Shown piece after piece: positions 4,325 to 31,830 of a DNA stretch of 64,000 nucleotides. Where the stretch lies: NCBI GenBank assembly GCA_002269645.1, contig NIVC01002279.1:62001-126000 (forward strand), written 5' to 3'. The position numbers and the translations under genes were made by a program. Source of the DNA: Macrostomum lignano. Lineage: Eukaryota. The notes beneath the pieces were generated by a model. That model saw only the letters and a list, made by a program, of their open reading frames with translations. It had not been told where the DNA came from and ran no database searches. How positions within the stretch are numbered: the stretch's first letter is position 1; each line of letters opens with the position of its first letter.

Positions 4325-7300
4325 CCTGGATGGAATTCTTGCAGAAAAATCACAACGCGTTATGCGATTGGGCGAAAAAAATGCGATTTTGTGTAAAAAA
4401 AATCAGGAAAAAATGTCTCGCAGAATTTCAGACAAAATTGCTAATTCTTAATATATGCAAAAGTGCGCTTGAGATATTGGATTTTGCTAAAGATAATCCT
4501 ACTAGCTAAGATCACGAAGAAAAAAGAATAAAAAGTAAAAACTAAATAAGGCACAAAAGTAAAAATTCGAAAAAATTCTATAAAAAGTAGAAACTCGTAA
4601 CATTCTCTAACATACGTATTTGGACGAAAATTCAAATCACTACATTTTCTTAGAATGCATTTTTCATTATTGTCTTATTGATTACTTTTTTAGATGAACA
4701 TACACATTACACTACACTGTTACATGTAGTTGTGGAATTTTGCTTCACGTTTTTAAACTTTATTGCTATACATTATAATACAAACAATTTCAAACAATGA
4801 ACATTGACAAGTCAATGTGTCGATGACATGAAGGAACTTTGTCAAATAAATATCCATACAAATACAATTATGCGACTATTCCATTCCATATGCGATGTGT
4901 CCCGTCTTAGCTCTCATTGGAGTCATTGCTCATCCCTAGAATATATTGTCACTGAGATATTGACTCTATGGACTATGCTGCGCTGCACTACTAGGTCTTA
5001 ACCACTTTTCTATCCCTTATGGCTATATTATATAAAATTTTCATATATACAATAGTCAATACAAAATAAAATATGTTACATTTATAATAGGTGTACTTGA
5101 AACCTGAAGCTTGAACACAATAGCTAGTTTCAATGAAAGAATCAAATCCAATGTTTATTGTTTGTTATGATTACAACTCAATTTTTTTATCAGTGACCAT
5201 ATCCATATGATTATTTGAAGTCTGATCTAGTCTTCTAGTTTAGTCTAGAAAAGTCTAGTAAAAAATTAATAATGTAATGTATTGTTGGTTTTTGGATAGG
5301 CATTAGAAGTAGATAAGATAATTACTACTGTGATACCAGATATAGTTTGTAATGCAAGTTTAAATATTTTTTCAGTGTCACTAAAATTTCATTCTGTTAG
5401 CTTTTCAGATATTCAATGAAACTATAGTTGTGACTATCAGCCTTAATAAAATGTCTGATTTGACACCAAGTCCACAACAAGACAATGCTCTTATGAGTGT
5501 AAGGCAAGAGTCTAATTCTGAAGACTCTGATGACTTGACTGTTATTGAACAAACTGCACAAACAAGTAAGACTGCTACTACTGGCAATGCTTCAGCCCAA
5601 TTTAGTTTTAGTAAGTGTTTTATTGCTATTACAGTGTTTTTTATATATTAATGTACTGTTTTGTGGAATAATTATATTGTCATAAAAAGTGAAAATTTTT
5701 TATAGATAGCTGGAGAACTTCTGCTTCTACTACAACTAGTTCTAGTACTAGTACAAGGCCAAGTGCTAGTACTTCTGGCTTAGCCTCAGCTGTACAAAAT
5801 CTACCAGAGCAAGAGGTAGAAAGCACTCTTGCAGATCCAGAAGCAAAAGCTGGTGCTTTTATTTGCAAAGAGTGCTACCAGATGAAAAAGGTAAGAATTA
5901 TTTTGTTAAAATAGTAGTATAGCTTACTGTTTTGATATACTGGTCATCCTCATTCTAAGGGTCTGGTTATAGTTTTCCCTCTAAAGTATTAACAAAGTAA
6001 CTATATTGCTTTAGAAACATTTGCCTCTTTTCTACCCATTAAACAGTACCACTGGGTCAGCAAAGAGGCCGATCGAAAGTGCCATATTCAGTCTTGAAGC
6101 CACACTGCCCCAACTTGCACTTTGCTGCAAAACTCTTCTGCTGCTGCTAGAAAGTTTGTGACAGGTTTGTTTTGATACTACTATGCATTCATTTCAATAC
6201 TTGTAACTAAATTGGTATCATTATACCAGTATCAGTCCTTGGGCCTTCTCACATCTGTAGAGCAAAAGCAGCGGGCCAGTGCTACTCTTTCTAAGCGGAA
6301 GTTGACTGCCCATGGCGACGAGGCTGAGCCAATCACGAAGAAGCTATCTCAAGTAGAAGTGGAATCGCAACGGCCAGAACCAGCAGTTGAGCAAGTTGGC
6401 AACTATGAGTCAGGGGGAATCAGCGAGAACATTGCCCGATCGCCCTCTGTCTTGGCCGTACAAGCTGGGACTGGGACTGAGTCAGCACAGGCACTGGATG
6501 AGCTTGCACCCAATTTAAAGAAGCTTTTATCCGATCTACTGAGTCTTGTAGCTGACGAGGTGCAAAAGCGAATGCTAGCAGTTAATGAGTCACAGTCACC
6601 AAGAAATGCCAATATCGCTGGTGCAAGTGACAACGTCACTAATACTGAGAGGTGGACTGCACTCAGTAACATCACCGAGCTGTGCAGAGCAGTCCCTGAT
6701 GTTGAGTTTTTCTTCGACGAGAAATCTGGCGAGTCTGTGCTCAGGTGCAAAACCTGTTGGTCCGATATGCATACCTAGCGGCTTAATAAGATGACCGTCT
6801 TTGAGTGCTGCCATCATTTTAACTTGTAAGTTAGTTTTCTTTGCAAAACTAGCAAAGTATGCACACCAATGCCAAAGTTCTCATTATTGCAACTACAGTA
6901 TCATACTGACCATCCATAATTTAGAAACGGAAACAGCACCTTTGGTACTGGTTGGTGGTACAACAAGAAAAAAACTGAGCTTCTATTAGCTGGTTTTTCA
7001 TCGGCAGATACAAGTTTTTGGCGCTCAGAAAAAGCGAAAATTCGGTCTCATCTACTAGGCTCCTCTGCGAGTGTGAATGGTGAAGAGCACACCAAAGCAT
7101 CAAATAAAGCTCGAGAAAAAGCAGAGCTAAACAGTCGCTGTATGGAAATCGCTAAGCGATTTGTTCGCTCTATGATTAAAATCGTACGAGCTAAGTCTGC
7201 TGCTGTACATTACGAAGACGAAATCACTGTCATGCGGCTTCAAGGATGTGACATAGGCAACCGAGGCCACGGAAGAAAGCAATTTAATATTCTGCTGGAA

Positions 7301-12110: not shown

Positions 12111-15100
12111 ATGTCTGAAAGTGTAAGGCTTTTATTGCCTTCCATTCTTTTAGCTGTTTTGCTTCTTTTTAAGGATATATCCATTCCTTTAAATGTTGAA
12201 ACAAATACTCATGAAAAGTCAATGATGCCCGAGGAAAAATCATTGCCAAAGCCTAAGCTTTCAATTCCAACATTAAAGGTTCTTTATTGGTAAGTAGGCG
12301 TAGTCTATAACTATAGTCAATTGTCTTGTTTAATTATTATTTTGCCATAATTATTTTTGGGCAATCTTCTAGTTTTGCACATTTAATTCAAACTGTTTTT
12401 AAAATGACAGTTAACAACAGTTTTGTTTTATGTTTTATGCCTCAGACGGCATAATAGTGCGCCACCCAGAAAAGGATGTTCCCAAAGGTGTTGCGTGGGT
12501 GGCAGCGTCGCCAGAGAAATTCCTCCAAATGGGTGTCGAACAGGGCCTTGGATATGCCATGCATGGCCCTAAAACGGGCCTTAGCGTGGGCCCATGTGCC
12601 CTCCACTGTGTTCGTGTGGACTTCTGGGTGGTTAGGGTCCACAAAGTTTAGCTAGTGGTTCACTGTCAAATGATTGGGCACATGGCGCCTAGCCATGATT
12701 ATTTTGCTAAAAGTAATTAAAAATGCTTTAAAATAATTAAACGTGCAAAACTAGAAGATTGCCATTTTTTGTATTAACCAAAACCTTAAGTTGTTAAGAG
12801 CAATTTTTTTCAAATAAATCAATTGCAATTTTTTTTTATATATTTAATTCTAAAGGTTTTTAAGTTTTAAACTTGCTTTGGGTCTTGACTTAAAAAGTAA
12901 TAATTCCTACCTGTCTTTTAAAATTTGTTATTGTTAGGCCTAAATAGTTTTTTTAATATATAATAAAATTCTAATTTGCTATGATTAAGGGCTAGACAAG
13001 TATGCAACTCATCAAGTTTTAAGTCAAACTACTTGGGTACCCAGTAAAATGCGGAATCCGCAACGGAATCGGAATGGAATAGTACGGTAAAACGCAGAAT
13101 CCGCAACGGAATGGTAAACTGCGGAACGAAGTGTGGATTCCGCATATTAAAGTAAAACGCGGAATGTGAAAATGAAAAAAGTAAAATGCGGAATGAAAAC
13201 TAACTGAATTATACTTTTATTCATCACCTTATATTTAAAAAACATCTGAAATTTATGTACATTTTTGCTGAACAAATTGTTTTTCATTGTCACTATGACA
13301 CTCAAATCAAATCTGTTGATCTTCCCTTAGCAAAATCCTCAGCAGAATGGTTAAGATACAGTAATTTTCGGAATGAAGATAGAGCTTTGGCAACTTATTT
13401 AAGGTAAATTCATACTCTGGAAGCGAAAGTGCATACTACGTACAATTTTTATATTTAATGTATTTTATTTCAAAAGTGCCCGCTGACATGTGGCGAGAAG
13501 TCATCCTACATCCTATTGCTGTCAAAAAAAATCGTAGCATTAAATGTGCATTTCTAAAAAAAAAATTATATCCAAAACTTTAGGACAAGATAGATTTTAG
13601 CGAAGCTAAAATTACGATTTGCAAGACACTTTTACATTTTTAGTGTCAAGAAAGGCAATAAATAGTACAAGGAAGCATGGAAAGTCAGATCAGTCAGATC
13701 AGTATGGAAGGTCAGTACCCTCTGGGAAAATCGCCGGCGAATCGCAAGCGAATTGTCAGCGAGACAGCAAAGTAGTGGCGACATTTTTTTTTCTTCATTT
13801 CCCATATAGAACGTTTCAAAAAGCTGTGTTTGTCTGGAACTTTTCTTCCTGCAGCATAAAACATAGTTTTTCCACCTCGGTCGCATTGGCAAATCGTCAG
13901 CGGAACACTAGCGAAGTTTCGCCAGCGACTTTTCGCCAGCGACGGGACAGCAAATCGCTAACAAATAAGTGCTTGATTATTTATTATTGGGGCTCTATTT
14001 TGCTAGTAAATATAAGAAAATGTATAAAATTATTTGATTTCTCACTTGCATAACAATCCCTTCATTCTATTCTATCGAATTAACCACTGCTTGGGGGTAT
14101 GAATCAGATAAATCATATATAGTGACTTCTCTAGGCAATAGAAAGTTAGGTATAACGAGTGGAACTCCTCCACTGAAGGACAAACCCAAGAAATTCGACT
14201 CCCCGAATTGTAATGTTGATGCAGTGTTTGAATCGCGAAGTCAAGTCATAGTATGGAAATTATCAATCTGGGCATATGTTTATATTTATAGTTGCACATC
14301 GGGTTCCGGAGTAACTATTACAAAAATGGGCATTGTTTTTATCGCAACCTTTTTGTTAACTTTATTAATCTATGCCTGCAAATAGTGCTTACTTCTAAGG
14401 ACACAAATCAACTGCTGGGCTGTTGTTTTGGGTCATAGTCACATAGAGGCTCTACCCGCACACCCGTAAAGCAGGTTGTTGTCGCCTGTAAACCCTCTTC
14501 GGAACTTAATCTCGTGGGCTTTGTCCACAGAAAAGTTAATGCATAGATTCAATCAAACAGTACATTTAGAAAATTAGCTGTTAATAGTTGGTCGCATCAA
14601 AAAGGATGTCCAGGAAAGGGTTTTGCTTGTACGTTAGGTTCCCTTGTAGCACATTTTGGCACTTGGAAATCAGGCCAGGTCCATGCATAAGCACTTTTTA
14701 ATATCATGATATATTGTGATAAACTGGCGCGGAAGCCTAGCACAAGTGAGCATCATGGTAACACTTCCGAATGCATTTGCAAGATAGGCAAATGGAATAT
14801 TTAAACCTTTCTTGCAAAGAAATTTATTTCTGTATTTTTAGCGGATACTTATTTCCGAAAACTGCACAATATGTTGTTAATATACATTCCGATGATAGAA
14901 ACTTTATTTGACACTACTAAAAATCAGCTTCTAAATAAATTAAGCTATATATACATGTAGCTAGATAGCTATTTGTAGTCTTTAGTACATGTTGATGTTG
15001 ATGAATAAAAGTATGATTCAGTTAGTTTTCATTCCGCATTTTACTTTTTTCATTTTCGCATTCCGCATTTTACTTTAATATGCAGAATCCGCACTTCGTT

Positions 15101-18100: not shown

Positions 18101-19150
18101 TGCTGAGTGGCCCATCTAGTTACTCTAGTGTCTGTGGTCACAGGTAATAAATATATTTTTTATAGCAATGCTAAATGCTTTTAATGCCAGCACTGAATTC
18201 ATCCCATTAACAGTTACTCCTGAGGCTACCGCCGGGTGTTTGAGGAATTCTCCCAAGCTCTGTCGCAGAAGTATCCAGCTCTGCAGATAGAAGGGGATAA
18301 TTATCCTCCACCCGCATGGCGACAACTATTGTGTACCGTACTATCGTGGACTAAGCTCGGTTTAATTATGGCCATAGTCATGGGCGTCGATCCGTTTCCA
18401 TATTTGGGCCTGCAAACGCCGCAGATGTATCAGTGGGCCAGTCAGAACCGCATGTACGCCTGCATGATGCTGTTCTTTATCTCCAATGTTGTTGAGGGCC
18501 AGCTCATCTCTACTGGCGCATTCGAGGTTACATTTAACGGTGAGTGAGGGAAGGGGCTCAGGGGGGGGGGTAGACTTGCCTAGACCTGAAGCTGAAGAGT
18601 ATTAAAATCATCAAAGCCTGAAGGAACCGAGGTTAGAACCAATTAGTTAAGAGGCAGTGGGCTGTGTGCATTCCAGCGCACTTGACTCCCCTGAGCAGGC
18701 ACACACTCACACAGGAGTGTACAGCGGCCCTAACTTTAATTATCGTTAGACTGTTAGACATGTACACTTTACTGTGCCTTGGGGGTTGGTGTTAATTGCA
18801 CGAGCAGAGCCAAGCCAAGATTCCAATTCAGCCCCAAATTAAAGTGACTGCACTTGGAATCGAGCCTGGGCCGCTGGCACACCAGAGCACCACGCCAGAC
18901 CACTGGGCTACGGCTGCCCGTTTAGGCCTGAAGTATTTCACTTTTGGACCCTGATGCAGACAGTATTAAGAAGCCAGAATAGGAATCGCCTCATCCCAAC
19001 TGAACTCTACACTTCCCCTGTTCTCTTCAAGGCATGTCCGTTTGGTCCAAGCTTCAGAACGGCCGCGTGCCGTCCATCGGTGAACTGATGGGCATCATCG
19101 ATAGCCACATGATGTCAGTGAACACCGCGACCGATCCGCCACAGCTTTAG
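12111..19150 (+). CDS. SELENOT: Selenoprotein T (thioredoxin-like, CxxU), 207 aa
   Basis: Exons 12111-12289 (signal peptide ...IPTLKVLY-TG|GTAAGT), 18214-18539 (T TAC TCC TGA GGC TAC CGC CGG GTG = C-Y-S-U-GYRRVFEEF...YACMMLFFISNVVEGQLISTGAFEVTFN) and 19032-19150 (GMSVWSKLQNGRVPS...PQL*). 624 nt, phases 2 and 1 consistent. UGA at 18221-18223 read as Sec; matches the SelT family pattern CxSUGYRRVF. Confidence 0.95.
12360..12763 (-). mobile_element. Non-autonomous Merlin (IS1595/ISXO2-like) element retaining the transposase C-terminus
   Basis: 29-bp TIRs GGCAATCTTCTAGTTTTGCAC(A/G)TTTAATT at 12360-12388 and 12735-12763, one mismatch. Flanks ATTTTTG and ATTTTTTG (8-bp TSD with one-T slippage). 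Minus strand encodes HLTVNH*LNFVDP..HTNTVEGTWAHAK..EFLWRR (12442-12672), typical of DDE_Tnp_IS1595. Confidence 0.85.
13036..15189. mobile_element. Non-autonomous Mutator-like element (MULE) with about 191-bp TIRs
   Basis: Perfect 9-bp TSD AACTACTTG (13027-13035, 15190-15198). TIRs 13036-13226 and 14999-15189, G...C termini, built of (AT)GCGGAAT motifs. No transposase ORF recognised inside. Confidence 0.9.
15250..15605 (+). mobile_element. tRNA-derived SINE, copy A
   Basis: A-box-like TAGCCCAGCGA (15256-15266) and B-box-like GGCTCAATTCC (15305-15315), then a body shared with copies at 18655-18915, 32115-32315 and 56105-56462. Confidence 0.75.
16032..16217. mobile_element. hAT-type MITE, 186 bp
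   Basis: 15-bp TIRs CAGTAGCGCAACCAG / CTGGTTGCGCCACTG (one mismatch). 8-bp TSD CTTGGATG / CTTGGATA (one mismatch). Confidence 0.85.
17714..18120. mobile_element. MITE-like element with ACTAGATGGGCCACT termini
   Basis: Inverted ends at 17714-17739 and 18096-18120; a third end lies head-to-head at about 17679-17693. No TSD identified. Confidence 0.5.
18655..18915 (-). mobile_element. tRNA-derived SINE, copy B (internally deleted), in SelT intron 2
   Basis: Minus strand reads GTAGCCCAGTGG...GGCTCGATTCC (A and B boxes) followed by the shared body; lacks about 90 bp present in copies A and D. Confidence 0.75.
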
Positions 19151-19457
19151 TGTGCCAGGCTGGCTTGCTTAAGCATTATTTTTACTCTCTAATGTATTAA
19201 TTCAGTTTTATTTTATTGTACATCGTATATTTTTATTTCAAGTTTTCAATTAACTTGCTATTATTGGTCCCGATTAAAATTAATTGTCTCATGTCCCAAA
19301 TTTACAAGCTCGAATTTTCACATCATCAAATTCGTATTAGATTGTGTCCTAGCGGTATTGACTGGCGAGAGTTTTCGATGGTATGAAATTTTTTGAGCTG
19401 ATGAAACGCCCTTAAAAACCTCTATGAATCTGATTGGCTGACAATTTTTATTTACAG

Positions 19458-20093
19458 CAGGGGTCGCAAAACTTTTTATCCCAAGGGTTAGATAGAGCCT
19501 AGCGTATGATTGTAGGCTAGAGGAGGGGCGAGAGAGGAGAGGAGAGAGAAGAGAGATAGGAGACGTGAGAGACGAGGGAATAGATGAAATAGGAGAGAGG
19601 AGATTCGAAAAGGCAGCTGAGAAGAGACAAACTCTGAGCAGGTCGGATTGCTATTGTGAAGTCTCAAACAACTCGAGGGCCGTATAGAGAGGATAAAACA
19701 GGAGAAAGGAGATATGAGAGACCAGAGACCAGAGCGAAAAGAGGAGAAGAGAGAGAAAAGAATAGAGGGGAGAGGGAAGAGACGAGAGAAGAGACGAGAG
19801 AGAGAAGTGAGAAAACAGAAAAGAAGATGGAAGTTTCAAAGGATGCAAAAGACATAGGGAGAGGCAGAGGTACGTAGAGGCCAGAGTTTGCCTGACATTC
19901 TGCGCAGCACCCCAGCCAACAATATCAATGTTTGCCTCAAATCCTAATTTTACATGAATGTACACTATTTTATGTTTAACTCTATCCTAACTATTAACAA
20001 GGGAACAAGTTTTTGTTTGAGTTTTACCTCAGATTTTAGAATACATGCAAAAATAATTCCGGGGAATGGAGTTCCCCGGGTTCAAAATCCGCG
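19458..20093 (+). mobile_element. Dispersed repeat with GA-rich core and hAT-like left end (CAGGGGTCGCAAAC), copy 1
   Basis: About 19740-20093 is the reverse complement of about 62337-62720. No right TIR or TSD found, so probably truncated. Confidence 0.7.
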
Positions 20094-20402
20094 TCCCATT
20101 ATAGCAAGACAATTATAGAGAGGCTTGGCGGGCTGGAGATTTAGACTTGCTGTAACTTGCTGTAACTCTATCCTGTCTACGTATTTTAACCTTTAAAAAA
20201 TCGAATTCTTAACCTAATACGATGCGTTAAACATGTATGTACTTGTATCTTATGGCGAATTGATTTTTTGAATCGCACAACTTACACTACTACGACTAGC
20301 GTGTAATAACACGAGTAATAACTTACCTCGACCTTGACATAATTCTTACGCCTTCAGTTATTAATGCATTCTCAATGCCTCAATTATTATTGGCTTGCGT
20401 AT

Positions 20403-20463
20403 ATGACGCCCTTCTATCGAAGCCCTAAACTCCGTTAAATTACCGGAGCGGGTGTTGGGCCGA
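20403..20463 (+). promoter_or_regulatory. Candidate SECIS element (form II) for SelT
   Basis: AUGAC (20403-20407), GCCC...GCCCU, apical AAA (20427-20429), mini-stem CUCCG/CGGAG, GGGU-GUU-GGGC, CGAU (20460-20463). Helix II carries an extra 7 nt on the 5' arm. Folded by eye only. Confidence 0.7.
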
Positions 20464-20648
20464 TCTCGTTGCTGCAATTGTGCGCAACAATCTGCATGCC
20501 AATGCAATATGCGAGCAGTTAAATTTGAGAAAGCTGACTAAATATAAATCTCTTTATCTACAACAACTGTGAGAACCGACTCTTTGCGTTGCTACTTTAT
20601 ATGCTGAATTGATACAGTAGGCCTCTTTAACTAGCACATTTGTAATCG

Positions 20649-21906
20649 CATCTATCCATGGGCTGAGTAAGCTATCCTTCTGATCTATCCATGGGCTGGG
20701 TAAGCTATCCTACTGATCTATCCATGGGCTGGGTAAGCTATCCTACTGATCTATCCATGGACTGGGTAAGCTATCCTACTGATCTATCCATGGGCTGAGT
20801 AAGCTATCCTACTGATCTATCCATGGGCTGAGTAAGCTATCCTACTGATCTATCCATGGGCTGGGTAAGCTATCCTACTGATCTATCCATGGGCTGAGTA
20901 AGCTATCCTACTGATCTATCCATGGGCTGAGTAAGCTATCCTACTGATCTATCCATGGGCTGAGTAAGCTATCCTACTGATCTATCCATGGGCTGGGTAA
21001 GCTATCCTACTGATCTATCCATGGGCTGAGTAAGCTATCCTACTGATCTATCCATGGGCTGAGTAAGCTATCCTACTGATCTATCCATGGGCTGGGTAAG
21101 CTATCCTACTGATCTATCCATGGGCTGGGTAAGCTGGTACTGATCTATCCATGGGCTGGGTAAGCTATCCTACTGATCTATCCATGGGCTGAGTAAGCTA
21201 TCCTACTGATCTATCCATGGGCTGAGTAAGCTATCCTACTGATCTATCCATGGGCTGGGTAAGCTATCCTACTGATCTATCCATGGGCTGGGTAAGCTAT
21301 CCTACTGATCTATCCATGGGCTGGGTAAGCTATCCTACTGATCTATCCATGGGCTGGGTAAGCTATCCTACTGATCTATCCATGGGCTGGGTAAGCTATC
21401 CTACTGATCTATCCATGGGCTGAGTAAGCTATCCTACTGATCTATCCATGGGCTGAGTAAGCTATCCTACTGATCTATCCATGGGCTGGGTAAGCTATCC
21501 TACTGATCTATCCATGGGCTGGGTAAAGCTATCCTACTGATCTATCCATGGGCTGAGTAAGCTATCCTACTGATCTATCCATGGACTGGGTAAGCTATCC
21601 TACTGATCTATCCATGGGCTGGGTAAGCTATCCTACTGATCTATCCATGGGCTGGGTAAGCTATCCTACTGATCTATCCATGGGCTGGGTAAGCTATCCT
21701 ACTGATCTATCCATGGCTGGGTAAGCTATCCTACTGATCTATCCATGGGCTGGGTAAGCTATCCTACTGATCTATCCATGGGCTGAGTAAGCTATCCTAC
21801 TGATCTATCCATGGGCTGGGTAAGCTGGTACTGATCTATCCATGGGCTGAGTAAGCTATCCTACTGATCTATCCATGGGCTGGGTAAGCTATCCTACTGA
21901 TCTATT
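20649..21906. repeat. 33-bp minisatellite TGATCTATCCATGGGCTG(A/G)GTAAGCTATCCTAC, about 38 copies
   Basis: Near-identical tandem units, no spacers. Confidence 0.97.
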
Positions 21907-22054: not shown

Positions 22055-23318
22055 ATGCTTTTGAGAACACTATGCTCAGACTTTGCCCGACGCTGCCTAC
22101 TCAATCCAGCCTGCTCTGTGCTGAATAGATCGCTCAGTAGCAGCGGCACCGGAGGAGGCGGCGCAGGTTCGAGCCCTCCCACTCATTGGGATCGCAGCAC
22201 GGATAGCGGTGTGACCTCAGACGAATCCAGTTCATCCGCTCTAACACCTGAATCGGCAGCAGCGCCAAAGGGTGTAGCCCTGGCTACCCACATGCTACTA
22301 AACCAGCCAACCTACAATGTAATGGGAGATATTGTCCCCGTGAACGAGTACCACCTGACTGAGGAGACTCCAGCTGGCGTGCCCTATCACACTTTGCCAA
22401 TTGTTTACTTTGGCGCCAGGCGCAATAATTGCATAGTAACAATCACGGATTGTTTGGGACGCCCATTGGCTGTTACCTCTACGGGAATTGAAGGCTTTCA
22501 TAATGCTAAGAAGTCTACGACTGTTGCTGCTCAGGTAAATTTTGTATAAAAATATTGAGTGTTTATTGTATTTTATGAGTGCTTCTAGTGCTGGTGCTGC
22601 GGTGCCGCGCATCGAGATCCGGTGGTACCGGTGTCCGTAGCGCTGTCGCCCCCCCCCCGAGAGTCCAGGAGGTGGATGGTCACTCGTCCGGTAGCCCTTA
22701 GGTAGCGGATGAGCTGGCAGAGATTCTCGGGCCTGAAAACGTCGGAGAGGTCCGGGTTTGGGCCGAGCTAGGTGAGCCTGTCCTGAGTAAAGGCGGGGCA
22801 TTCCCAGATAAAGTGCTCCGCTTTCTCGACATGCTTGACTAAACAGCGATGGTCACCATGATTTCCCTGCGGTTTGAGTCCAAGCAGGGCCCTGCGCATG
22901 GCGGAGGAAGGACTTTGAAGCCACCCACTGGTTGATCCGAGTGGTGGCAACGGCGGTGAGGGTGGGGCCACGGGCAAGGAACCGTGGAGTAAAAGAACCG
23001 GCCGGAGCCAGGCGATCGGCCAACTCGTTCCCGGGGTGGCCCTACTACTGTAGCCGATTTCAGTACTTCTACTAAATTCTGCGAGCATCAAAGAATTCAT
23101 TACAATTCTGTTTCCAGGTAGTTGGCGTTTCAACCGCGCTGAAGGCTAAGAAGCTGGGCATCAGCCACGCTCGGGTGGTGATCCGCGGCATGAACCAGCT
23201 CCGTCTGGCCTGTCTGAAGGGCATGTCAAGCGGCGGACTGCAGATCGTGTCGCTAACTGACAATACCAAGATTCACTATGGCAAGGGTAGACGGCCAAGG
23301 AAACCGCCTAGAAAATAG
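22055..23318 (+). CDS. MRPS11: Mitochondrial ribosomal protein uS11m, 226 aa
   Basis: Exons 22055-22534 (CAG|GT) and 23118-23318 (CAG|), phase 0. Presequence-like N-terminus; [19 protein letters not shown]...[19 protein letters not shown]|[24 protein letters not shown]...[10 protein letters not shown] matches uS11. Confidence 0.92.
22588..23061 (-). mobile_element. 3' fragment of a non-LTR retrotransposon in the MRPS11 intron
   Basis: Minus strand [14 protein letters not shown]...R..*LG...DVF....[10 protein letters not shown] resembles the C-terminal zinc knuckle and tail of RNase-H-bearing LINE ORF2. Possible TSD AGT(G/A)CTTCTA at 22578-22587 and 23062-23071. Confidence 0.65.
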
Positions 23319-29272: not shown

Positions 29273-29602
29273 GAAATTTCCCTACAAATCTCTCTCCAAC
29301 TTCCTTACAATCGTTATACAGTTTTTCAAATCCAACAGTACCACGGCCAGCTCCGATACGAGTTTTATTTGCCAAGAGATATTTGTCAGGGGATCAGGGG
29401 ATTCGATTGTGCTTACGATAGAATTAAATTCTGTCTTGCAAATAAGAGACAAATGTCTTGCGCTGCAACGGATCTCGCAGCTAGTCTTTTCGCCTTTGCA
29501 ACTTTGAGTCAACAAATGATTTTCACAGTCGAGTCTGATGGGTGCTGCTTGATTGCATGTTTGCTTACTGGCTGCAACTGCTCTGAGGCTCTGGATTACT
29601 AC

Positions 29603-31382
<1,780 letters not shown>

Positions 31383-31830
31383 ATCCATTCTATCGACTGG
31401 AGGCAACAGAGGAGAGAGTATCAGCTAGACTATTTCAATGGCATCTCTCGTCAGCTACCTAGTGCTAGACTTGGGCGTTTCTCAGACTTATTCTTGACCA
31501 CGGAAAGCTGACTGCCTCGGGTAACTCATGCACAGAGTGCGGCCAGGGAAGAGACGACCAGACCGTAAACGTATTACAGTTCTGTGCGACAGCTGGAGCG
31601 CTGCATCAAATAAACAAGTCCATCTCTGATTAATAATTCACACTATAGCTGAAGGTGCCATCTTCACTGGGCTTTGAGGGTTGAGGGAGTCAGATTTATA
31701 CTATGAGACAGAGTTGCCACCAATCGACTGACTTCATCTTGAACTGGCTACGACGCTCAGCAACCGCTCTGTCAGCTGTTGGTCTCGGAAAAGAGACTTT
31801 TTAAAGGATTTATCTTGACAACTGTCACAG

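What the first reader, a model, noticed from the sequence alone, without database searches (positions are those of the whole stretch)
20390..20475. Candidate SECIS with a 7-nt insertion in helix II
Seen: AUGAC GCCC [UUCUAUC] GAA GCCC U AAA CUCCG-UUAAAUAC-CGGAG C GGGU GUU GGGC CGAU. Without the bracketed 7 nt this has 12-nt arms, the GA quartet, apical AAA and a form-II mini-stem. The extra bases must bulge out or form a UUC/GAA side hairpin. Established: canonical SECIS helix II is about 11-12 bp, and its length fixes the distance from the SBP2 core to the apical As. Inference: this is the SelT SECIS, and it either tolerates a branch or bulge (a non-canonical class that standard scanners could miss) or is a weakened allele. 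It is the only SECIS-like structure I found downstream of the UGA.
Basis: partly seen in the sequence, partly recalled or inferred. Interest (0 to 1): 0.72.

Follow-up and report, generated by a model that had tools for sequence, protein, structure and literature searches.

The report
Flatworm SelT SECIS with lopsided stem
Downstream of a selenoprotein T gene of the flatworm Macrostomum lignano lies the only hairpin that could tell the ribosome to read UGA as selenocysteine, but one strand of its main stem carries 7-8 extra bases, so standard models do not recognise it and its activity is unproven.

Summary
The window is Macrostomum lignano contig NIVC01002279.1. It carries an intact three-exon SelT gene with Sec-UGA at 18221-18223 and stop at 19148-19150.

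At 20403-20464 there is AUGAC/CGAU, two 4-bp GC-rich stems, UAAA and a 5-bp mini-stem. The 3' arm is 12 nt, which is canonical. The 5' arm is 19 nt, against 11 nt in all five outgroup SelT SECIS I retrieved.

Support:
- It is the only such hairpin between the UGA and the next gene, and the only match to a relaxed SECIS descriptor in 128 kb. About 0.02 matches are expected by chance in the 2.9-kb 3' region.
- It is identical in all three genomic copies of the locus, so it is not a weakened allele. Their coding sequence is under constraint.
- The M. lignano SelT paralog has a similar hairpin with a smaller 5'-strand excess (14 nt).

Against:
- Rfam SECIS_1 and two custom covariance models give it no significant score.
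- I could get no transcript or activity data.

Verdict: probably the real SelT SECIS, a form-2 variant with a large asymmetric loop in helix II. Confidence is about 0.55.

The parts
12111..12289 (+). SelT exon 1 (signal/N-terminal part, ends ...LKVLY-TG|gtaagt)
   Evidence: The spliced CDS is 624 nt, in frame, and gives 207 codons.
18214..18539 (+). SelT exon 2. It holds the CYSU redox motif, with the Sec codon TGA at 18221-18223.
   Evidence: It is 99% identical to M. lignano PAA58730.1/PAA55977.1, Pfam Rdx PF10262.
19032..19150 (+). SelT exon 3, with stop TAG at 19148-19150
   Evidence: No variable site among the three copies.
19693..20113 (.). 421-bp repeat insertion between the stop codon and the hairpin, flanked by a 10-bp target-site duplication TATAGAGAGG. 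It is absent from copy L001.
   Evidence: L001 shows the empty site. A 75%-identical copy lies elsewhere in L005.
20394..20398 (+). Possible helix I, 5' strand (UUGCG), pairing with UGCAA at 20474-20478
   Evidence: By inspection. It is ambiguous: the constrained fold prefers a different, branched closing.
20403..20407 (+). SECIS core, 5' side: AUGA + C
   Evidence: The AUGAC...CGAU core is the same as in outgroup SelT SECIS L007 and L010.
20408..20411 (+). Helix II lower stem, 5' strand GCCC, pairing with GGGC at 20457-20460
   Evidence: Present in the MFE and in the 15 lowest-energy suboptimal folds listed.
20412..20421 (+). Extra 5'-strand bases UUCUAUC (20412-20418) plus GAA (20419-20421), opposite GUU at 20454-20456. 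This is a 10x3 asymmetric internal loop, or a 7-nt bulge with two weak pairs.
   Evidence: -15.2 kcal/mol (open loop), -14.4 (bulge plus G.U/A-U), -11.7 to -14.3 (side hairpin).
20422..20425 (+). Helix II upper stem, 5' strand GCCC, pairing with GGGU at 20450-20453
20426..20429 (+). Unpaired U + AAA (candidate AAR motif) directly 5' of the mini-stem
   Evidence: The A-run holds the same place in the paralog and in the five outgroups with an AUGA core (L004, L007, L008, L010, L011).
20430..20448 (+). Form-2 mini-stem CUCCG (20430-20434) / CGGAG (20444-20448) with the 9-nt loop UUAAAUUAC
20449..20464 (+). 3' arm C GGGU GUU GGGC (12 nt, 20449-20460), followed by the 3' core C GA U (20461-20464)
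   Evidence: The 12-nt 3' arm matches the 11-12 nt of the five outgroups with an AUGA core and of the paralog.
20541..20548 (+). AAUAUAAA, the only poly(A)-signal-like string shortly after the hairpin. This is inference only.
   Evidence: There is no AAUAAA between 19151 and 23000, and the single AUUAAA is at 19273.

Best explanation
This is the SECIS element of one Macrostomum lignano selenoprotein T gene. It is a form-2 SECIS whose helix II is split into two 4-bp G+C-rich stems by a large asymmetric internal loop.

Proposed working (inferred): AUGA (20403-20406) and GA (20462-20463) form the kink-turn quartet that SBP2 binds. The 3' strand of helix II keeps the canonical 12 nt. The 7-8 surplus bases on the 5' strand are looped out. 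The number of stacked steps between the quartet and the unpaired AAA (20427-20429) below the 5-bp mini-stem therefore stays close to canonical. The element can then recode UGA 18221-18223 as selenocysteine, possibly with reduced efficiency.

Shown: the gene, the in-frame UGA, the hairpin and its geometry, its uniqueness in the region, and its fixation in all three copies of the locus.

Inferred: that it lies in the mRNA, that the extra bases are extruded, and that it is active.
For: 1. SelT is intact, with the CYSU motif. TGA and the reading frame are kept in all three copies. Coding sites vary less than non-coding sites (3/445 against 43/1591, Fisher p=0.010). The gene is therefore under constraint and needs a SECIS.
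2. No canonical SECIS exists in the 64-kb window. Rfam at gathering threshold finds nothing. A model built from outgroup SelT SECIS, run with filters off, finds nothing above 11.7 bits. That model does recover a held-out outgroup SECIS at 24.2 bits.
3. The candidate is the only unbranched NUGA...GA hairpin in the 3' flank between the stop codon and the next gene. The three others found downstream of the UGA straddle the exon 2-intron 2 boundary. It is also the only hit of a relaxed descriptor in 128 kb, with about 0.017 expected by chance in the 3' region.
4. Its core AUGAC...CGAU is identical to that of two outgroup SelT SECIS. Its 12-nt 3' arm, A-run and mini-stem match all of them.
5. The second M. 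lignano SelT gene (L002/L003) also has a single such hairpin, again with an over-long 5' arm (14 nt, UU bulge four pairs below the A-run) and a 12-nt 3' arm. About 0.009 chance hits are expected in its 1.5-kb flank.
6. The region is single-copy, not part of a repeat.
7. It is identical in the three copies (0/89 variable sites).
Against: 1. Rfam SECIS_1 gives no match at E<=10 even on a 111-nt search. The same model scores four outgroup SelT SECIS at 24-37 bits.
2. The outgroup SelT SECIS model R1 scores the region at 4.6 bits, and in a different register.
3. A model of the paralog's hairpin (R2) does not find it. Homology of the two M. lignano elements is therefore not shown.
4. The fold is no more stable than shuffles (z=0.36).
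5. The 5' spacing of 19 nt is far outside the 11 nt seen in every outgroup. The literature treats helix 2 length as fixing the AUGA-AAA distance (PMC2761289, PMC2647825).
6. Zero variation over 89 nt is not significant (about 2.4 variable sites expected).
7. There is no transcript evidence. The only AUUAAA lies at 19273, upstream of the hairpin.
8. The descriptors were written post hoc.
Confidence: 0.55

Rival explanations
1. It is the same element in a different register. The functional AA is A20420-A20421, exactly 12 nt after AUGAC. The two arms are ungapped 12-mers (GCCCUUCUAUCG / CGGGUGUUGGGC, 8 of 12 pairs). The surplus bases (GCCCUAAA) sit in an enlarged apical internal loop below the mini-stem, so the core-to-AA spacing is canonical on both strands.
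For: The spacing of 12 nt falls in the canonical range and is close to the 11 nt of all outgroups. This fold costs only 1.9 kcal/mol more than the MFE (-13.7 against -15.6).
Against: It gives up the 4-bp GCCC/GGGU stem and has four mismatches in 12 steps. In the paralog and the five outgroups with an AUGA core, the A-run lies directly 5' of the mini-stem, as AAA 20427-20429 does here. No covariance model supports this register either.
Confidence: 0.12
2. It is a crippled SECIS. An insertion in the 5' strand has weakened or killed it, and this SelT copy is kept mostly non-productive or is decaying. The paralogous SelT (P0003) supplies the function.
For: Removing the 7 nt improves the fold by 5.3 kcal/mol. 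The helix 2 spacer is described as length-constrained (PMC2761289). A second SelT gene with a less deviant hairpin exists.
Against: All three copies keep the TGA, the frame and the splice sites, with reduced coding variation and only one amino-acid change. The same 5' excess is fixed in copies that differ by about 2.7% elsewhere, so it is old relative to their divergence. The paralog's own hairpin is also over-long on the 5' strand.
Confidence: 0.15
3. It is a chance hairpin. The real SECIS is something none of my scans recognise, or lies outside the region examined.
For: Three covariance models give no significant score. The fold energy is ordinary. The descriptors are post hoc. There is no significant conservation signal.
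Against: About 0.017 such hits are expected by chance in the 3' region, and none occurs elsewhere in 128 kb. The paralog independently shows the same kind of hairpin in its 3' flank. The core is identical to outgroup SelT cores. No alternative was found from the UGA to the next gene or anywhere in the window.
Confidence: 0.18

Closest known systems
Canonical eukaryotic form-2 (type II) SECIS, Rfam RF00031 SECIS_1; here the SelT SECIS of other invertebrates (L004, L007, L008, L010, L011)
   Same: It lies downstream of a SelT stop codon. It has an AUGA...GA quartet, with AUGAC/CGAU identical to L007 and L010. It has a 12-nt 3' arm, an unpaired A-run directly 5' of a mini-stem, and a small apical loop.
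   Different: The 5' arm is 19 nt instead of 11, so helix II carries a 10x3 asymmetric loop. There is no score with SECIS_1 or with a SelT-specific model, against 24-37 bits for four of the outgroups. It sits 1253 nt after the stop in the genome (about 830 nt in the copy without the repeat insertion), against about 50-320 nt in the outgroup transcripts.
SECIS-like hairpin of the second M. lignano SelT gene (P0003; L002 5430-5485, L003 5524-5579)
   Same: AUGAC core, 12-nt 3' arm, a 4-bp G+C stem just below the A-run, and a mini-stem starting CUC. The surplus bases are on the 5' strand at the same place, four pairs below the A-run. It is also invisible to Rfam.
   Different: The surplus is only 2-3 nt (UU bulge, 14-nt arm) against 7-8 nt. 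The lower stem sequence is unrelated. A covariance model of it does not retrieve the window element, so common descent is unproven.
Kink-turn RNAs bound by L7Ae-family proteins (the SBP2 target)
   Same: Tandem sheared G.A/A.G pairs are possible between UGA 20404-20406 and GA 20462-20463, flanked by a G+C-rich helix. SBP2 binds such motifs (PMC1874613, abstract).
   Different: Nothing here tests K-turn formation or protein binding.

Membership tests
Eukaryotic SECIS element (RF00031 SECIS_1) | Lies in the 3' UTR of an mRNA with an in-frame Sec-UGA | tested here: inconclusive
   In the genome it lies 1253 nt after the SelT stop and 1.6 kb before the next gene, on the same strand. Inclusion in the mRNA could not be tested, because no M. 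lignano transcripts are in the searchable collections.
Eukaryotic SECIS element (RF00031 SECIS_1) | Quartet core: A/G-UGA-N on the 5' side and N-GA-N on the 3' side at the base of helix II | tested here: met
   AUGAC at 20403-20407 and CGAU at 20461-20464, followed directly by G-C pairs. The core is identical to those of L007 and L010.
Eukaryotic SECIS element (RF00031 SECIS_1) | Fixed helix II length: about 10-13 nt between AUGAN and the unpaired AA (helix 2 of 11-16 bp including the quartet; PMC2647825, PMC2761289) | tested here: not met
   The 5' strand has 19 nt against 11 nt in all five outgroup SelT SECIS. The 3' strand has 12 nt, which is canonical. An alternative AA at 12 nt exists, but in a weaker fold.
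Eukaryotic SECIS element (RF00031 SECIS_1) | Unpaired AA(R) in the apical loop or internal loop 2 | tested here: met
   UAAA at 20426-20429 is unpaired in the MFE and in nearly all of the listed near-optimal folds; two pair U20426-A20427.
Eukaryotic SECIS element (RF00031 SECIS_1) | Form-2 additional helix (mini-stem) above the A-run | tested here: met
   CUCCG/CGGAG, 5 bp, 9-nt loop.
Eukaryotic SECIS element (RF00031 SECIS_1) | Helix I closing an internal loop below the quartet | tested here: inconclusive
   UUGCG (20394-20398) / UGCAA (20474-20478) is possible. The constrained fold prefers another, branched closing.
Eukaryotic SECIS element (RF00031 SECIS_1) | Score at or above the family's covariance-model threshold (35 bits) | tested here: not met
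   No SECIS_1 hit at E<=10 in searches of 64 kb, 3.6 kb, 501 nt or 111 nt. The custom SelT SECIS model gives 4.6 bits.
Eukaryotic SECIS element (RF00031 SECIS_1) | Conserved, with compensatory changes, in orthologous genes | tested here: inconclusive
   It is identical in three copies that differ at about 2.7% of sites, which is uninformative (0/89). The only more distant comparison is the paralog, and that alignment is not statistically supported.
Eukaryotic SECIS element (RF00031 SECIS_1) | Binds SBP2 and directs Sec insertion at UGA | not testable with these tools
   Needs a reporter, 75Se labelling or a binding assay.

The most novel reading that the evidence does not exclude
Macrostomum lignano, and perhaps macrostomid flatworms generally, use SECIS elements whose helix II tolerates a variable surplus of looped-out bases on the 5' strand while the 3' strand keeps its canonical length. 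The surplus is 2-3 nt in one SelT gene and 7-8 nt in the other. The ruler between the SBP2-bound kink-turn and the AAR motif would then be read along the 3' strand, or as stacked steps, not as 5'-strand spacing. Selenoproteomes predicted with current scanners, which discard bent helix 2, would be incomplete in such lineages.
Probability: 0.3. Interest if true: 0.55.

Novelty: new variant of a known kind. Interest (0 to 1): 0.4.

Why it matters
SECIS prediction drives selenoprotein annotation. The core-to-AAR spacing is treated as a hard rule, both in search patterns and in mechanistic models. A natural, selected SECIS with 7-8 unpaired surplus bases in one strand of helix II would show how much asymmetry the SBP2/eEFSec/ribosome complex tolerates. 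It would also show that scanners which filter on helix-2 'bending' (PMC3753652) miss real elements. M. lignano supports transgenesis, so the question can be tested directly. If the element proves inactive or weak, the locus instead documents a selenoprotein gene kept under constraint with an impaired recoding signal, which is also informative.

Tried and rejected
- **Rfam cmscan**, at gathering and at E<=10, on 64 kb, 3.6 kb, 501 nt and 111 nt: no SECIS hit.
- **Custom model R1**, built from four outgroup SelT SECIS. It validated on held-out L010, but neither M. lignano element scores.
- **Custom model R2**, built from the paralog's element. It does not find the window element, so I dropped the claim that the two are demonstrably homologous.
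- **MAFFT and R1 alternative register.** Both suggested UAUcGAA (20415-20421) as a degenerate second 'AUGA'. I rejected this. It scores 4.6 bits, has UCGA instead of UGA, and leaves only 5 nt to the A-run. The internal 8-mer repeat GA[C/A]GCCCU is at chance level by my estimate.
- **Side-hairpin or three-way-junction reading** (CUUC/GAAG): 1-4 kcal/mol worse than an open loop.
- **The ATGA at 19401** (gcugAUGAaacgccc): no helix II is possible.
- **Conservation test across the three copies**: the 104-nt variant-free stretch is not significant.
- **Transcript evidence**: the protein collection holds no M. lignano transcript-derived SelT, so the mRNA 3' end could not be checked.
- **Other M. lignano selenoprotein genes**: they could not be reached, because homology searches list only the best 120 hits and carry no organism filter.
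- **Literature**: nothing on M. lignano SECIS or its selenoproteome.

Full report
**What is there**

The window is Macrostomum lignano. Positions 19000-20660 are 100% identical to contig NIVC01002279.1 (L006). The + strand carries a three-exon selenoprotein T gene:
- exon 1 at 12111-12289
- exon 2 at 18214-18539
- exon 3 at 19032-19150, with stop TAG at 19148-19150

The spliced reading frame has 207 codons with the redox motif C-Y-S-U. The Sec codon TGA is at 18221-18223. The translated product is 99-100% identical to M. lignano PAA58730.1 and PAA55977.1, Pfam Rdx. The next gene, mitochondrial ribosomal protein S11, starts near 22055.

**The observation**

At 20403-20464 the sequence reads AUGAC GCCC UUCUAUC GAA GCCC U AAA CUCCG UUAAAUUAC CGGAG C GGGU GUU GGGC CGAU.

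- The two GCCC/GGG(C/U) stems and the 5-bp mini-stem appear in the MFE and in the 15 lowest-energy suboptimal folds listed.
- The middle part is best described as a 10x3 asymmetric internal loop (-15.2 to -15.6 kcal/mol).
- The side hairpin is 1-4 kcal/mol worse.
- Deleting the 7 nt gives -20.9 kcal/mol and 12-nt arms on both sides.

**Is it more than chance?**

Stability alone says no. The z-score is 0.36, and 8 of 139 ATGA sites in the window fold as well.

The architecture says yes. I wrote a relaxed descriptor requiring:
- ATGA...GA
- an unbranched fold with at least 8 pairs in helix II
- a 3' arm of 10-13 nt and a 5' arm of 10-20 nt
- an AA before a mini-stem of at least 3 bp

It hits only this site in both strands of the 64-kb window. 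Composition-preserving shuffles give 0.73 hits per 128 kb, or about 0.017 in the 2.9-kb 3' region. A tighter descriptor gives 0.175 per 128 kb. Both were written after seeing the element, so they overstate significance somewhat. The surrounding 537 nt are single-copy.

**Does the gene need a SECIS, and is there another one?**

The assembly holds three copies of the locus: the window (= L006), L001 and L005.
- All three keep the TGA, the frame and the splice sites.
- Coding sites vary less than intron and UTR sites (3/445 against 43/1591, Fisher p=0.010), with one amino-acid change. The gene is under constraint.
- No canonical SECIS exists. Rfam finds nothing at gathering threshold in 64 kb.
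- A covariance model I built from four outgroup SelT SECIS (R1) finds nothing above 11.7 bits in the whole window with filters off. The same model recovers a held-out outgroup SECIS at 24.2 bits.
- A scan for any NUGA...GA hairpin from the UGA to the next gene leaves only this candidate in the 3' flank.

**Comparison with relatives**

I fetched six SelT transcripts from other invertebrates (Logan and JGI contigs L004, L007-L011).
- Five have an AUGA-core form-2 SECIS. In all five, exactly 11 nt separate AUGAN from the A-run, and the 3' arm is 11-12 nt.
- Rfam scores four of them at 24-37 bits.
- The window element shares their core (AUGAC...CGAU as in L007 and L010), the 12-nt 3' arm, the A-run and the mini-stem. 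Its 5' arm is 19 nt.

M. lignano has a second SelT gene (P0003, 61-65% identical, loci L002 and L003). Its 3' flank also holds a single such hairpin: AUGAC GAACAGUUUGGCCG AAAA ... UGGCCACUGGUC UGA. The 5' arm is 14 nt, with a UU bulge four pairs below the A-run, and the 3' arm is 12 nt. Rfam does not see it either. Two independent SelT loci of one species thus both show a 5'-strand surplus at the same place.

A model of the paralog's hairpin (R2) does not retrieve the window element. I cannot claim common descent, only shared architecture.

**Evidence against**

- All three covariance models give no significant score.
- The element's identity across the three copies (0/89 variable sites, about 2.4 expected) is not significant.
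- The literature treats helix 2 as a spacer of fixed length: 14-15 bp in PMC2761289, and 11-16 bp in PMC2647825.
- No transcript data were reachable.
- The only canonical poly(A) hexamer after the stop, AUUAAA at 19273, lies upstream of the hairpin. An AAUAUAAA follows the hairpin at 20541.

**Interpretation**

The most likely reading (about 0.55) is that this is the working SelT SECIS, a form-2 element with a large asymmetric loop in helix II. The surplus 5' bases would be looped out, so the quartet-to-AAA distance, counted along the 3' strand or as stacked steps, stays canonical.

The 'weakened allele' alternative is not supported. The surplus is fixed in all three copies.

The rivals are:
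- the same hairpin read in the ungapped register, with AA 20420-20421 at the canonical 12-nt spacing (0.12)
- a crippled element in a gene backed up by its paralog (0.15)
- a chance hairpin (0.18)

SECISearch3 is described as discarding candidates with 'too much bending' of helix 2 (PMC3753652).

**Novelty**

I found no paper on M. lignano SECIS elements or its selenoproteome. If active, this is a new variant of a known kind, not a new kind. It is of moderate interest, because it bears on the spacing rule of SECIS recognition and on the sensitivity of selenoprotein annotation.

Noticed in passing
window 19693-20113: A 421-bp repeat insertion sits in the SelT 3' flank, with a 10-bp target-site duplication (TATAGAGAGG). 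It is present in the window and in L005. Copy L001 shows the empty site. A 75%-identical copy lies at L005 873-1296. The insertion starts with a purine-rich GA tract.
   Followed up: partly
window 20650-21905: A 33-nt minisatellite (ATCTATCCATGGGCTGGGTAAGCTATCCTACTG, about 38 copies, 96% matches) lies between the hairpin and the S11 gene. The spacing from SelT to S11 differs among the three copies.
   Followed up: partly
L002 5430-5485 and L003 5524-5579: The second M. lignano SelT gene has its own SECIS-like hairpin with a 14-nt 5' arm, also invisible to Rfam. It sits about 820 nt after the stop, behind a block of tandem repeats (L002 about 4760-5290). An AUUAAA follows about 135 nt later. 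L003 differs by one base at the top of the mini-stem.
   Followed up: partly
L009 805-857: One outgroup SelT transcript seems to carry a SECIS with UUGA instead of AUGA at the core (GUUUGAC...CUGAU). It scores 15.1 bits with my model and gets no Rfam hit at E<=1.
   Followed up: no
window 19151-19152 and 20356-20357: A GU directly follows the stop codon (UAG|GUGUGC), and a pyrimidine-rich AG (cuuacgccuucag|) lies 45 nt before AUGA. If used as a 3'-UTR intron, this would bring the hairpin to the 46-77 nt stop-to-SECIS distance seen in four of the outgroups. This is pure speculation without transcripts.
   Followed up: no
window 19273-19278: This is the only AAUAAA/AUUAAA hexamer between the SelT stop and position 23000. 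It lies 123 nt after the stop and upstream of the hairpin. Use of this site would give an mRNA without the candidate SECIS.
   Followed up: no
window 29400-31400: Long simple repeats (CTGT/CTAT-type, read as LSVC/LSIY in ORF lists), with strong strand skew, lie further downstream.
   Followed up: no
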